Shown piece after piece: positions 23,647-33,969 of a stretch of 64,000 bases of DNA. The number at the start of each line of letters is the position of its first letter. Position 1 is the first letter of the stretch. Origin of the DNA: Pocillopora damicornis (lineage: Eukaryota). Below the pieces are notes generated by a model. That model was given only the letters and a program-made list of their open reading frames with translations. It was not told the origin of the DNA and did no database searches. The position numbers and the translations under genes were made by a program. The DNA is taken from the NCBI RefSeq assembly GCF_003704095.1, contig NW_020844363.1, forward strand, positions 372,001-436,000, written 5' to 3'.

Positions 23647-26600
23647 TTAAACCTGGGTACATTTCACTCCGGGCAATCTGCCGCATGTTATCCACCAGTC
23701 CCATTGAACAAACACGGACGAGACCAGCGGGCAGCCAAGGCGAACTGTCTTTTCCCAGTCACGCACTTCGTTTCCCATTCGGTAATACATTTTAAATGTC
23801 ACCACTAGAGGATCCTACATGTTAAGAGAGTGAGAGAAAGAGGACATTCAGATTTTTGTGTGCAATTTCTTCATCCTGAATTCCAGCTTCCAGTCGTTCT
23901 CTGTTATTCTGTCAGATACGAACTTAAAACACAAGGAAAAAAGAGTTTGGAAAAAAAAATTTTAAAATAATCGGCTGTCGGGAGCGAGGAGGGGGGGGGG
24001 GGAAGGGTAAGGTATGTTTCTTGAAACCCTCACCCTATATCCGGCTGAAAGATTGATTGTTTTCCCACTTTAATCAGCCCTGATGCAAACAAACCTTCTT
24101 TGTTTGAGCTTCACCAAGTAAACTTCAATCAAACATTTACAACAAATAATGAAGTGGCATTGAGTAGAAATTAGTCCAGTGCAGAGTGTTTATCCACCCT
24201 GAACATAACCAAAACCTGGGGAGGGGTGGCAGGGGCAGTCTACTAACTCACCCCTTTTGGATGAATAGGCCAGCTAAGTATGTAAACTGAGTGCACTTTT
24301 GATTATATAGAAGATTATTAGAAATAGAGCACATACCAGTAACTTTTGTAGTCTAGACAACTGTACTACTTGTTCTAAAACTCCTCCATTTTCACCCAGG
24401 AGTTCACCAGAGAGAAGGCGAACTTTGCTCATGACAGGCTGCAAACAAATCCAAAACAGAAATCCCTAATCACACCTTCAAATTTTGAAAATCATAACTA
24501 CTTTTGAATCTACTGACAATCAGAGCTGGTTTACTCCTTGCATAAGGAGTTTGTCACTGGCTTTTTTCTATTACACATGGTGCTGTGTAAACTTAGGTAT
24601 TAGGATTCCATATTGCTTCTGCAGATGCTTGAGTTCTGCTATATCTGACTTATAAACCAATTATAGCACCTGAAAATCAGTGATCAATTAGTCAATGAAT
24701 CAAAGGCCCAATCAAAAAGTCAATCAATCAACGTATCTGTCAATAAATCAATCCATAATCCTATCACCCTATCACCTACTTAGTCAATCAATCAATGTAT
24801 CTGTCAATCAATCACTCTATAATCCTATCACCCACTTAGTCAATCAATCAATGTATCTGTCAATCAATCAATCTATAATCCTATCACCTACTTAGTCAAT
24901 CAACCAATCAATTAATCATGATTGATCAATTAACAACAAAAACACGTTACTGTTCTAAGAAATGTTTGAGGTTCAAGAGTAACACTGAGTTTGCAACTTA
25001 CCGTGGGTACTTGTAGATCCATCACAACTTCTTGTAGTGGAGCAGGATTTGTATTATGAGCAGAGATCTTAATTTCCATAACATTTGAAAACACAGGTCT
25101 GCATTCAAATGATATGACCAGTCCATCTTGGTCAATTGGTGGGATTTCATCTGGAAGATCTGCAGAAATTGTGAAACAAGAAAAATTCAAAAAGTGTGAT
25201 ACCACTTGAGGGGGGGTATGGACAATAATCTCCTACTCCACAAGTGTTCTTATTGCCCACCTCTTCTTCCCCCCTCCCCCCCCCCCCTTTCCTCTGATAC
25301 CTTTCCTCTAACCCCTTTACCCTTCCTGTAACATATCCTCTAAAAACATTCCTCCAGTCTTCTGTTGTGCTTTCCATGTGTATGGAAAACCTACTAATTT
25401 TGACCTAAAATTCAATGAGAGTCTCCTTCACTGGAAAAATTTCCAAACAATTACCAGTAGTTCCACTAGCTCCAAGGTTCTGCAAGCAACATTTGTTGTT
25501 GCAAAGTGCAGAACCCAGGCTCTTGTAGGTCATACCAAATGCATGCAAGAAAAACATGCTTATCTTGTTCCATTTTATCCGATGAAAAAAAGAAAAAAAA
25601 ATGGCTTTGTACTTTAACCAAAAGATTTTCTCTGTTTCACATGGAAATGGACAGCACCACTGCTACTCACAATGAGCCTGATTCCAGAGTTTCATTCGTT
25701 CCCCAAATTCCTCTGGCAGCAAATCTGGTACAATAGGATCAGTGAGTCGACAGTCTGCTACTGCATCACTCTCATGGCATGGTCTCTGGATCAGATTTCT
25801 GCTACTTGCACGGCTAACATCTGTTTAATACAAACAGAACAGAGTTCTCAGAAGTTCCAGGGTTCATTTCTTCATAGCAACTCAGATTGTTCTTTGTCCC
25901 ACAATTGTGCCAAATTGATAAACATCTTTCTTTGAGAATTTAAGAGTCAAAATGTCTTACCACGAGCGACATCCATAAGTATGAGCTCAATTCGCTCATT
26001 TCTTCTGATATGTCTCAGTAAATGTGTCGCATACAGGCCATTTGGCTGGTTTGGCTCTTCATATGCCTCCTGTTGGGAACAACTGATACAACAACCCAAG
26101 ATAAAATGATTAGTTCTCCCCTTCTAAATCAAAATAATAAGGTGTTGCTAATTCATAGACTCTCCCTCTCTATGGCATTATGCATTATTGTGGCATTAAT
26201 GAGAGGAGCTTGGGAAAGATTGGTGCCAGTCCCTTTATGTTTTCAAAATCAAATTAAAAAAAGGATGTTAATGTATTTGAGATAGCACTATCCCTCTATA
26301 AAACTGTTTTAAACTTGCTCTCAAAGGTACTAATCTCTATGTTGAATCACTAATCACCAAGTAAATCAATACAGGAGTTAAGGTTCTTTGTAAGAAGAGT
26401 TTCTGTGACAGTCATACTGCCTGCTGCTAGGCTACTGTCTAATCAGGAATATGCTTAGAATATATTCACCAATGAGTTGGCATTTCTTTAGATTCACACC
26501 AAAGTGGAAAACTAGTTATGACAGAAAGAAAGAGTTGGAATAACAAGTGGAAAAAGTAACTTTTCATAGGCCTAGCATAACTATACCAATAAAGAAATCT

Positions 26601-32600: not shown

Positions 32601-33969
32601 CAGGTCACTGGGAAAGAGGTTAGACGCACATTAGAAACAAACATCATCTGCAGCCTGGAAGACCAGTAACATGCCAATCAAGTGATTCAATGGGGGAGGG
32701 GAGGTGAGATCAACTGCCATTATGAGGAGACCCTTGACATCAGAAGGGAATCCAAGGAGGCTTTTCATATCCCACACCAATGTCGATTGTAATACAGAGT
32801 TAAGGACTATGAACTGTTGAAGACTGTGAGACAAGATCAAAAATCAAGAGGCTGCAAAAAATAATGAGTGGGAAACTACAACTTCCTTACTTATTTGTTC
32901 ACCCCTTCTCTTAACCCTTTACCTCCTAAGAGTGACCAAGACAGAATTTTTCCTGACAATATCCATACAAAATCAGGCACACAAGTGATGAGAATAAGGA
33001 AAAATATCAATTAGGGGTTTATCATTTGATCATTTATCATTTGATCAATTACAAATTCTTATAACTAAAATTAAAGGAAATGTATGGAAGACAGTTTGGA
33101 GAATTACTTTATAAATCTTGGGAGTGAAAGGATTAAGAAAGATAATTTCGTCTACTGAGCCACCGTACCTTAATCGTTGAGAAATGTTTTTTTCACATGA
33201 ATGCTGCTATGAGCTTACTTAAAGATTGAAACGTTCGCTATTGTAAACTAGTCGATCTTTTAGCGGAAATGGATGTGTACGCAAACAACTGAAGGTCAAG
33301 GCTCGAAAAGAAATCAATCAGGAGGTGTTTCTAAAGAAAAATTTCGTTTCAAGGCGATGACAATTTCCAGGAGAGAATTGAAGAAGCTGTTTGTATACAA
33401 ACGGACGCAATCGAATGGAACCAAAAGGTTACATTCTTTCTACTGATCGAACGAAGCATCAAAAGCAATTGAGTAAAAAATAAAAGAGAGACAATTCAGT
33501 TATGCTCACGAAGTTTTATGTCCACGACTGGCTTTTTTTCATTTTCGTAATAGCTTCATACATGCCCATGCAGATCATATTAATAAATGCAAATTTACTG
33601 ATTCTGGGCATGTTTCTGAGAAAACGCTCAAGCTATTTGATTAGATCTACCTGTAAATTCGACGGGTCTGAGAATGTTAACAGCATCGTCTCTTCCCATG
33701 CTTTTTAGAAGTTCAATCAGATGTGTAACTGTTTTGACTTCTCCATTTCTTTCCGAAGACATCCACCATTCGTACAACAGGGACACCGTCGGGTTCTTTT
33801 GTCGCTCAAAATTCCTCACGCTTTCGTAGTTATAATTCATTTTCCCAGCAAGATATCTGAAATCTTTCATTGGATGTCTGGGATTTAGTTTCATACCAAG
33901 CTGTTCCAGTATATCCATGCTCAAACAATTCACAAGTGTACTGACTCGCTTCATCTTCTCGGAAGCCAT
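23647..33969 (-). CDS. MALT1: MALT1-like paracaspase with atypical architecture (death domain - Pro-rich linker - C14 protease - Ig3), ~602 aa
   Basis: Exons 33969-33651, 31466-31356, 30716-30621, 29471-29442, 29246-29160, 28559-28432, 27598-27529, 27110-26918, 26717-26643, 26082-25961, 25820-25671, 25159-25002, 24438-24337, 23814-23647 (1809 nt, phases close). DKVALVIGN, YYAGHGYE (His), IIDSCR (Cys), LTDPI, FSNVM, RLQKL and LGCPLV are MALT1 hallmarks. The symbol denotes the family, not strict orthology. Confidence 0.88.
24690..24915. repeat. TCAA-rich compound tandem repeat, ~56-63-bp unit, ~3.5 copies
   Basis: Recurrent TAGTCAATCAATCAATGTATCTGTCAATCAATCAATCTATAATCCTATCACC. Confidence 0.9.
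30318..30530. mobile_element. TTAA-flanked MITE
   Basis: TTAACCCTTC...GAAAGGGTTAA. Body is the reverse orientation of the 7962 copy. Confidence 0.85.
31783..32027. repeat. Diverged tandem duplication, 132-bp period
   Basis: TTACCAATCTG at 31793 and 31925, each followed by AAGTTTGAACAATTT...AAACAAACTG.TGGTGGTCT. Confidence 0.85.
32911..33136. mobile_element. TTAA-flanked MITE
   Basis: TTAACCCTTT...AAAGGATTAA, with a small internal duplication TTTATCATTTGATCA. Confidence 0.8.

What the first reader, a model, noticed from the sequence alone, without database searches (positions are those of the whole stretch)
23647..33969. Paracaspase with a MyD88-like death domain and no Ig1-Ig2: candidate TLR/myddosome-coupled protease
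Seen: one phase-consistent exon chain joins a death domain, a ~108-aa Pro-rich linker, a complete paracaspase domain and Ig3. The His/Cys dyad is intact (YAGHG, DSCR), as are the acidic P1-Arg pocket residues (EKDAY, IIDSC, EAYEE). By eye the DD (LGMKLN...DFRYLAGKMNYNY...NPTVSLLYEW...VTHLIELLKSMGRDDAV) aligns much better to MyD88 (LSLFLN...DWTALAEEMDFEY...DPTGRLLDAW...VGRLLELLTKLGRDDVL) than to the MALT1 DD. Known: type 1 paracaspases are DD-Ig-Ig-protease-Ig, type 2 lack the N-terminal domains, and BCL10 engages the MALT1 N-terminal region. Inference: this is a third architecture that may be activated by DD-DD assembly with MyD88/IRAK-type partners rather than a CARD-BCL10 filament.
Basis: partly seen in the sequence, partly recalled or inferred. 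Interest (0 to 1): 0.85.

Follow-up and report, generated by a model that had tools for sequence, protein, structure and literature searches.

The report
Ig-less death-domain paracaspase of corals
A real, expressed coral gene ties a death domain through a floppy linker straight to a MALT1-type protease; it belongs to a cnidarian paracaspase branch already named PCASP-t1C. Its death domain resembles those of MyD88 and TNF-type receptors, not MALT1's, which hints at, but does not show, a different on-switch.

Summary
RNA contigs from four studies splice the death-domain (DD) exon through five small linker exons into the paracaspase exons. All 15 exons have GT-AG borders. The 633-aa product is identical to RefSeq XP_027038038.1 (Pocillopora damicornis, "MALT1-like"). 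The linker is 139 aa, not about 108, and is predicted to be disordered. There are no Ig1-Ig2 exons, although the same profile finds them at 61-71 bits in this genome's two canonical type 1 paracaspase genes. The His/Cys dyad, the acidic S1 pocket and Ig3 are intact.

The DD is not of the MALT1 class: 12-18 bits against the canonical profiles. Its best solved match is the MyD88 DD, by sequence (63 bits) and by fold. However, it is equally close to TNFR/p75-type DDs. The DD tree cannot place it: AU tests reject neither a MyD88 nor a canonical-paracaspase grouping.

The architecture is conserved across Cnidaria. The family is already named PCASP-t1C in Staal et al., which files it under type 1. 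I found no text on its missing Ig domains or its DD class. Coupling to MyD88 remains a hypothesis; the complex prediction gave no answer.

Verdict: a real, ordinary-looking member of a named family, with an under-described architecture and a testable activation hypothesis.

The parts
33651..33969 (-). Exon 1: start codon at 33969 and the whole death domain (aa 1-106). It ends in phase 1. RNA contigs extend the 5' UTR to about 33985.
   Evidence: Pfam Death 5e-11; AF2 six-helix bundle, mean pLDDT 86; RNA contigs cover 33651-33985
31356..31466 (-). Exon 2, linker (111 nt, phase 1-1); carries a PPEAPF motif
   Evidence: Joints 31466>33651 and 30716>31356 in 4 of 4 RNA runs; no Pfam hit; motif scan
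30621..30716 (-). Exon 3, linker (96 nt, phase 1-1); carries PPQENEY, which matches the TRAF2-type PxQE and TRAF6-type PxExx-aromatic patterns
   Evidence: RNA joints; motif scan; motif kept only in stony corals
29877..29969 (-). Exon 4, linker (93 nt, phase 1-1)
   Evidence: RNA joints; exact exon map
29442..29471 (-). Exon 5, linker mini-exon (30 nt, phase 1-1)
   Evidence: RNA joints 29471>29877 and 29245>29441 (cut +1) in 4 of 4 runs
29160..29246 (-). Exon 6, linker (87 nt, phase 1-1), Pro-rich
   Evidence: RNA joints
28432..28559 (-). Exon 7: start of the paracaspase domain (DKVALVIGN; S1-pocket Asp274 in EKDAY)
   Evidence: Peptidase_C14; joint 28559>29160; alignment to human MALT1
27529..27598 (-). 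Exon 8, paracaspase domain
   Evidence: tblastn of P0148 and orthologues; exon map
26918..27110 (-). Exon 9: catalytic His324 (YAGHG), Cys373 and Asp371 (IIDSCR)
   Evidence: Peptidase_C14 1.5e-6; aligned to the human MALT1 YYAGHGYE and LLDMCRKR motifs
26643..26717 (-). Exon 10, paracaspase domain
25961..26082 (-). Exon 11: paracaspase domain with Glu409 (EAYEE)
25671..25820 (-). Exon 12: end of the paracaspase domain and the helical link to Ig3
25002..25159 (-). Exon 13: first part of the Ig3-like beta sandwich
   Evidence: AF2 strands 500-605, pLDDT about 90; Foldseek hit to human MALT1 caspase-Ig3 4i1p, E 7e-30
24337..24438 (-). Exon 14: Ig3-like domain
23647..23814 (-). Exon 15: end of Ig3, a conserved Trp-rich C-terminal tail, and the stop codon at 23647-23649

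Best explanation
This is the single-copy Pocillopora orthologue of the cnidarian paracaspase paralogue PCASP-t1C. It makes a 633-aa protein with four parts:
- a death domain (aa about 7-105);
- a 139-aa disordered, Pro-rich linker built from five frame-neutral mini-exons;
- a catalytically intact MALT1-type paracaspase domain;
- an Ig3-like domain.
Ig1-Ig2 are absent, here and in all orthologues examined (shown).

The DD belongs to the receptor/adaptor class (MyD88, p75NTR/NRADD-type TNFR DDs). It does not belong to the divergent class of canonical paracaspases that docks on BCL10 filaments (shown by similarity; common descent is not excluded).

Inferred mechanism: the DD recruits the protein into an oligomeric DD platform nucleated by a MyD88-type adaptor or a TNFR-type death receptor. 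Crowding on that platform dimerises the paracaspase domain, as BCL10 filaments do for MALT1, and this turns on Arg-specific cleavage. The flexible linker gives reach and may, in stony corals, carry TRAF-docking motifs. The partner's identity is open. Independence from BCL10 is likely but untested.
For: - One transcript: six GT-AG joints in 4 RNA runs, plus one contig spanning DD to caspase. The product is identical to XP_027038038.1.
- No Ig1-Ig2: a canonical N-terminal profile run with a positive control, tblastn with Ig-bearing paracaspases, no Pfam hit on the linker exons, and pLDDT 25-35 over aa 110-243. The linker ranges from about 30 to over 350 aa among 14 orthologues with no conserved fold, and their precomputed Pfam lists hold Death + Peptidase_C14 only.
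- Intact protease + Ig3: E 1.8e-42 to human MALT1 with the catalytic and S1 motifs aligned; Foldseek E 7e-30, TM 0.78.
- DD class: MyD88 63 bits, NRADD 47, p75NTR 44, IRAK3 39 and MALT1 23 in PDB. In its own genome the best non-self DD is in a DD+TIR gene (67.5 bits), followed by a p75-like DD (66.8). Canonical DDs score 15 bits or nothing against the t1C profile, and the window DD scores 12-18 bits against canonical profiles.
- Separate clades in the DD tree: t1C 96/90, canonical 97/93.
- Fold ranking: MyD88 first, p75NTR second, MALT1 DD 48th.
- The genome keeps two canonical DD-Ig-Ig-caspase genes, so t1C is an extra, distinct paralogue.
Against: - There is no binding or activity evidence of any kind. 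The only complex prediction gave no answer.
- The AU test does not reject t1C DDs forming one clade with canonical paracaspase DDs (p 0.20). The canonical DDs sit on long branches, so t1C may simply keep a conservative ancestral paracaspase DD that could still bind BCL10.
- The TRAF-like motifs are not conserved beyond stony corals.
- The cnidarian type 1 paralogues A and B showed no MALT1-like cleavage or NF-kB scaffold activity in human cells (PMC5978004). Activity of t1C therefore cannot be assumed from motifs alone.
Confidence: 0.5

Rival explanations
1. One reading: the DD is a MyD88-derived module that co-assembles with MyD88/IRAK DDs. On this view t1C is the protease arm of a cnidarian TLR/IL-1R myddosome.
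For: - The MyD88 DD is the best solved match by sequence and by fold.
- The window DD is more like human MyD88 DD (32 bits) than this coral's own DD+TIR genes are (26 and 14 bits).
- The best non-self DD in the genome lies in a DD+TIR gene.
- The NPT...W and GRDD motifs are shared with human MyD88.
Against: - The DD is equally similar to TNFR/p75-type DDs (71 against 70 bits; hhalign 139 against 129).
- Its sister in the tree is the TNFR-DD group, not MyD88.
- A t1C+MyD88 clade is not recovered, though it is not rejected either (p 0.26).
- This DD class is fused to many unrelated domains in this and other invertebrates: GT4, OTU, HEPN-amidase, RING and photolyase-type modules.
- The complex prediction gave no answer.
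Confidence: 0.2
2. An ordinary type 1 paracaspase that secondarily lost Ig1-Ig2, keeps a slowly evolving ancestral paracaspase DD, and still works downstream of CARD-CC/BCL10.
For: - AU does not reject a single origin of t1C and canonical DDs (p 0.20).
- DD exons of t1C and of a canonical gene end in phase 1 at the same place. All linker exons are phase 1-1, as Ig exons usually are, so Ig exons could be lost or swapped without breaking the frame.
- Both t1C domains have short branches while the canonical ones are long.
- The literature files the family under type 1.
Against: - The DD shares only about 12% identity and 12-18 bits with canonical DD profiles.
- The Ig region that helps MALT1 bind BCL10 is absent.
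- In the caspase-domain tree, the canonical clade (cnidarian + vertebrate) excludes t1C (92/92).
- The phase-1 DD intron is shared with the MyD88 genes too, so it does not discriminate.
Confidence: 0.2
3. Gene-model artefact: the DD exon and the protease exons belong to two neighbouring genes.
For: There is a 2.2-kb first intron, and about 5 kb separates the DD exon from the first caspase exon.
Against: - The same six canonical joints appear in four RNA runs from four studies, and one contig spans exon 1 to exon 7.
- Full-length 633-aa products were assembled independently in several Logan runs, and the RefSeq models of three Pocillopora species are the same length.
- The same architecture occurs in Porites, Montipora, Acropora, Nematostella, Actinia, two octocorals and a jellyfish.
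Confidence: 0.01

Closest known systems
PCASP-t1C, the cnidarian type 1 paracaspase paralogue C (Hulpiau et al. 2016; Staal et al. 2018)
   Same: It is the same family. The N-terminus printed for AdPCASPt1C in the supplement matches the Acropora orthologues P0151/P0154 by eye, and those are 63-66% identical to this protein. EpPCASPt1C and HmPCASPt1C carry the same LNP-KD-LAGKM DD signature.
   Different: Nothing differs in the protein. The papers I could read define type 1 as DD + Ig + paracaspase. They do not mention that this paralogue lacks Ig1-Ig2 or has a different DD class. Hulpiau 2016 could not be read.
Human MALT1 (PCASP1)
   Same: The paracaspase-Ig3 module matches: E 1.8e-42, about 31% identity, with the His/Cys dyad and three acidic S1 residues aligned. 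Both have an N-terminal DD.
   Different: There is no Ig1-Ig2. The DD is only remotely similar (23 bits; Foldseek rank 48). A 139-aa disordered linker stands where the Ig pair would be. The MALT1 TRAF6 sites are not conserved.
Canonical type 1 paracaspases of the same coral (two head-to-head genes, contig C2590, 348-366 kb)
   Same: They share a paracaspase domain (44% identity over the core exon) and a DD exon ending in phase 1.
   Different: The canonical genes have Ig1 and Ig2 exons (61-71 bits), a canonical-class DD (35-42 bits) and a fused core caspase exon. t1C has none of these.
MyD88 (DD + TIR adaptor)
   Same: The MyD88 DD is the closest solved DD (63 bits; TM 0.73-0.75; 33-34% identity). 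The phase-1 intron after the DD falls at the same place as in the coral's three DD+TIR genes.
   Different: There is no TIR domain. The DD is as close to TNFR/p75-type DDs as to MyD88, and it is not placed with MyD88 in the tree.
Type 2 paracaspases (protease domain without DD or Ig)
   Same: Both lack Ig1-Ig2. The t1C paracaspase domain branches outside the canonical type 1 clade.
   Different: t1C has a DD. I could not fetch type 2 sequences, so the relation is untested.

Membership tests
Type 1 paracaspase (DD-Ig-Ig-paracaspase-Ig3, as defined in PMC5978004) | N-terminal death domain | tested here: met
   Pfam Death 5e-11; six-helix AF2 model
Type 1 paracaspase (DD-Ig-Ig-paracaspase-Ig3, as defined in PMC5978004) | Two Ig domains between the DD and the protease | tested here: not met
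   The RNA-defined linker exons have no Pfam hit. A canonical DD-Ig-Ig profile finds no Ig in 22001-36000 on either strand, against 61-71 bits on control loci. Linker pLDDT is below 50.
Type 1 paracaspase (DD-Ig-Ig-paracaspase-Ig3, as defined in PMC5978004) | DD of the canonical (MALT1, BCL10-docking) sequence class | tested here: not met
   It scores 12-18 bits against canonical DD profiles, where members score 70-221. It forms a separate clade (97/93).
Type 1 paracaspase (DD-Ig-Ig-paracaspase-Ig3, as defined in PMC5978004) | DD shares its origin with canonical paracaspase DDs | tested here: inconclusive
   AU test p 0.20 for t1C + canonical as one clade
Type 1 paracaspase (DD-Ig-Ig-paracaspase-Ig3, as defined in PMC5978004) | Paracaspase domain with His/Cys dyad and acidic S1 pocket, followed by Ig3 | tested here: met
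Type 1 paracaspase (DD-Ig-Ig-paracaspase-Ig3, as defined in PMC5978004) | Binds BCL10 and is activated on CARD-CC/BCL10 filaments | not testable with these tools
   No assay is available.
PCASP-t1C (cnidarian paralogue C) | Orthology to AdPCASPt1C, EpPCASPt1C and HmPCASPt1C | tested here: met
   63-66% identity to the Acropora and Montipora orthologues. The t1C DDs form one clade (96/90); in the caspase-domain tree the anthozoan t1C sequences form one clade (97/93). The supplement's N-termini match by eye.
Type 2 paracaspase | No death domain N-terminal of the protease | tested here: not met
   The DD exon is spliced to the protease exons.
MyD88 adaptor family | DD followed by a TIR domain | tested here: not met
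   A sponge MyD88 query matches only the DD exon on this contig. The full product carries Death + Peptidase_C14 only.
MyD88 adaptor family | DD groups specifically with MyD88 DDs | tested here: inconclusive
   MyD88 is the best PDB hit, but it ties with TNFR-type DDs. The tree's sister group is TNFR-DD at 91/75, and the AU test gives p 0.26.

The most novel reading that the evidence does not exclude
PCASP-t1C is the protease effector of a cnidarian DD signalosome that bypasses BCL10. It would be recruited directly by MyD88 (TLR/IL-1R) or by a TNFR-type death receptor through its receptor/adaptor-class DD. It may also preserve the ancestral paracaspase N-terminus from before Ig insertion and BCL10 coupling.
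Probability: 0.2. Interest if true: 0.75.

Novelty: new member of a known kind. Interest (0 to 1): 0.4.

Why it matters
Staal et al. asked what activates type 1 paracaspases that do not depend on BCL10. They proposed one ancient BCL10-dependent lineage and one BCL10-independent lineage. The PCASP-t1C branch has an intact protease, no BCL10-binding Ig region, and a DD of the MyD88/TNFR class. It therefore offers a concrete and cheap test: which coral DD proteins does it bind, and does forced proximity switch it on? A positive result would link paracaspases to TLR or death-receptor signalling in corals, where MALT1-like genes respond to bleaching stress. It would also inform how the CBM complex evolved. 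A negative result leaves a secondarily simplified type 1 paralogue.

Tried and rejected
- Complex prediction of the window DD with the DD of the coral's MyD88c gene: no answer (ipSAE 0.00, controls not run). This is not evidence for or against binding.
- AU tests on the DD tree rejected none of the groupings tried.
- The protein-atlas search on the DD returned only generic 'Death domain' clusters.
- Searching with P0161 for Ig-bearing cnidarian paracaspases returned only vertebrates, because it is a vertebrate protein.
- Searching with P0101 for MyD88 relatives returned only sponges. Broad MyD88 and IRAK sampling, and type 2 paracaspases, could therefore not be added to the trees.
- Hulpiau et al. 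2016 is not held, by DOI or by PMC id.
- The two-genes reading and the hidden-Ig-exon reading were tested and rejected.
- TRAF motifs as a family-wide feature were rejected, because they are conserved only in stony corals.
- The joined exon model was never sent to a search tool. Searches used exon references, or the database proteins P0148 and P0354 that a tool returned. Joining was done only inside, to count mismatches, and nothing was printed or saved.
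Full report
**Anatomy**

The feature is a minus-strand gene. Stop-to-stop frames and Pfam show a death domain (DD) in 33651-33969 (Death, 5e-11) and Peptidase_C14 exons further down.

I laid RNA contigs of four runs from four studies on 28300-34100. All four show the same six joints with GT-AG borders:
- 33651 to 31466
- 31356 to 30716
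- 30621 to 29969
- 29877 to 29471
- 29442 to 29246
- 29160 to 28559

One 980-nt contig runs from the DD exon into the first caspase exon. The DD and the protease are therefore one transcript.

Exon-by-exon translation shows that all five intervening exons (111, 96, 93, 30 and 87 nt) start and end in phase 1.

A database protein returned by the homology search, P0148, was assembled from RNA. It maps onto 15 window exons. Its cluster holds XP_027038038.1 (Pocillopora damicornis, 'MALT1-like', 633 aa = P0354) and equal-length models from two further Pocillopora species. A local check gives 15 GT-AG exons and 0 mismatches to P0354.

I did not send a joined exon model to any search tool. Searches used exon references or these database proteins.

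**No Ig1-Ig2**

- The 139-aa linker has no Pfam hit and is 15.8% proline. Its pLDDT is 25-35 with almost no secondary structure in an AF2 model built on 14 orthologues.
- I built a profile of the DD-Ig1-Ig2 region from Ig-bearing paracaspases and ran it at full sensitivity on both strands of 22001-36000. It hits only the DD exon, and weakly (11.8 bits). The same profile scores 61-71 bits on the Ig exons of this genome's two canonical paracaspase genes on contig C2590.
- Among orthologues the linker runs from about 30 aa (Actinia) to over 350 aa (octocorals) without conserved structure.

**Protease and Ig3**

- The product matches human MALT1 caspase-Ig3 at E 1.8e-42. YYAGHGYE, the Cys motif and the three acidic S1 positions align.
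- These residues are invariant or nearly invariant in the family.
- The model's best structural matches are MALT1 caspase-Ig3 crystal structures (E 7e-30, TM 0.78).

**What kind of DD**

Comparison with solved structures:
- Alone, the DD hits MyD88 DD at E 7e-7, NRADD at 7e-5 and IRAK4 at 0.02. MALT1 DD does not appear up to E 10.
- A profile of the DD family gives MyD88 63 bits, NRADD 47, p75NTR 44, IRAK3 39, IRAK4 27 and MALT1 23.
- A confident DD model (pLDDT 86) ranks the MyD88 filament first, p75NTR second and MALT1 DD 48th.

Comparison within the coral's own genome:
- The best non-self match is the DD of one of three tandem DD+TIR genes on contig C2038 (67.5 bits). A p75-like DD on C4113 follows at 66.8 bits.
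- The canonical paracaspase DDs score 15 bits or nothing.
- The window DD is more like human MyD88 DD than the coral's own DD+TIR genes are.

The preference for MyD88 is not specific, however:
- Against group profiles the DD scores 70 bits for MyD88, 71 for TNFR/p75-type DDs, 63 for a GT4/OTU-linked DD group and 18 for canonical DDs.
- hhalign gives 139 for TNFR-type, 129 for MyD88 and 51 for canonical.

In a maximum-likelihood tree:
- The t1C DDs are one clade (96/90).
- Canonical paracaspase DDs are another, on a long branch (97/93).
- The sister of t1C is the TNFR-DD group, with weak support (91/75).
- AU tests reject neither t1C+canonical (p 0.20) nor t1C+MyD88 (p 0.26).
- The phase-1 intron after the DD sits at the same place in t1C, in the MyD88-like genes and in a canonical gene, so it does not discriminate.

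In short, the DD is clearly unlike MALT1's. It belongs to the broad MyD88/p75 class, which in this and other invertebrates is fused to many other domains (earlier notes s1-765120 and s1-783737). Its origin is unresolved.

**Family and literature**

The same architecture (Death + Peptidase_C14, no Ig) occurs in Porites, Montipora, Acropora, Desmophyllum, Nematostella, Actinia, the octocorals Dendronephthya and Xenia, the jellyfish Rhopilema, and hydrozoan-like metagenome proteins.

The supplement of Staal et al. 2018 (PMC5978004) lists AdPCASPt1C, EpPCASPt1C and HmPCASPt1C, whose N-termini are of this family. [quoted passage not shown]

Those texts define type 1 as DD + Ig + paracaspase. They say nothing on missing Ig domains or on the DD class of this paralogue. 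Hulpiau 2016 could not be read.

In a paracaspase-domain tree the Ig-bearing proteins (cnidarian and vertebrate) form a clade (92/92) that excludes the short-branched t1C lineages. Type 2 sequences could not be fetched, so it remains open whether t1C arose by Ig loss from type 1 or by DD gain on a type 2-like protease.

**Mechanism**

Shown: one protein with a DD, a disordered linker, an intact paracaspase domain and Ig3.

Inferred: the DD recruits the protein into an oligomeric DD platform, and proximity-driven dimerisation of the protease follows, as BCL10 filaments do for MALT1. Because the BCL10-docking DD class and the Ig region are missing, a partner of the MyD88 or TNFR type is more likely than BCL10, but nothing tests this. 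The one complex prediction (window DD with MyD88c DD) gave no answer.

TRAF-type motifs (PPQENEY, PPEAPF) are present, but they are conserved only in stony corals.

**Surroundings**

Upstream on the same strand lies an IGHMBP2-type helicase gene (AAA_11/AAA_12, R3H and zf-AN1 exons at 35.3-42.6 kb). Downstream there is a trypsin-like exon on the plus strand. The introns carry two families of dispersed short repeats.

**Verdict**

The gene is a member of an already named cnidarian family. Its distinctive architecture is real and conserved, and, as far as I could read, not spelled out in print. Coupling to MyD88 is one of at least two equally plausible partner hypotheses.

Noticed in passing
window 32905-33140 and 30410-30535: Two dispersed short repeat families sit in introns 1 and 3. 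They are about 215-230 bp at 76-79% identity and about 120 bp at 85-90% identity. First-look candidates genome-wide number at least 2557 and 1786. They carry very high summed RNA-contig depth that comes from other loci.
   Followed up: partly
G000 contig C2038, 120.5-146.2 kb (loci L017, L018, L033): Three tandem plus-strand genes have MyD88 architecture (a DD exon, then two TIR exons). Their DDs are less like human MyD88 DD (26 and 14 bits for the two tested) than the paracaspase DD is (32 bits).
   Followed up: partly
G000 contig C2590, 348-366 kb (loci L019, L020, L040): Two head-to-head canonical type 1 paracaspase genes have DD, Ig and caspase exons. The core caspase region is one fused exon, where the window gene has three.
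   Followed up: partly
window 23677-23730 (-): A strongly conserved Trp-rich C-terminal tail (PLVSS...WDWW.TCG) follows Ig3 in hexacoral orthologues and is partly kept in octocorals. It has no known counterpart in MALT1, and its function is unknown.
   Followed up: no
P0010 (XP_048580644.1, Nematostella vectensis): Nematostella has a clear PCASP-t1C orthologue (604 aa). The 2016 preprint stated that sea anemones lack this paralogue.
   Followed up: partly
window 35347-42584 (-) and 19563-20090 (+): The upstream neighbour on the same strand has AAA_11/AAA_12 helicase, R3H and zf-AN1 exons (IGHMBP2-type). Downstream a trypsin-domain exon lies on the opposite strand.
   Followed up: partly
P0035, P0079, P0080, P0144, P0026 (hits): DDs of the same MyD88/p75-like class are fused to a GT4 'conflict-system' glycosyltransferase, HEPN + amidase, OTU, a photolyase FAD-binding domain and a RING domain in unnamed database proteins. 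This points to wide shuffling of this DD class.
   Followed up: partly
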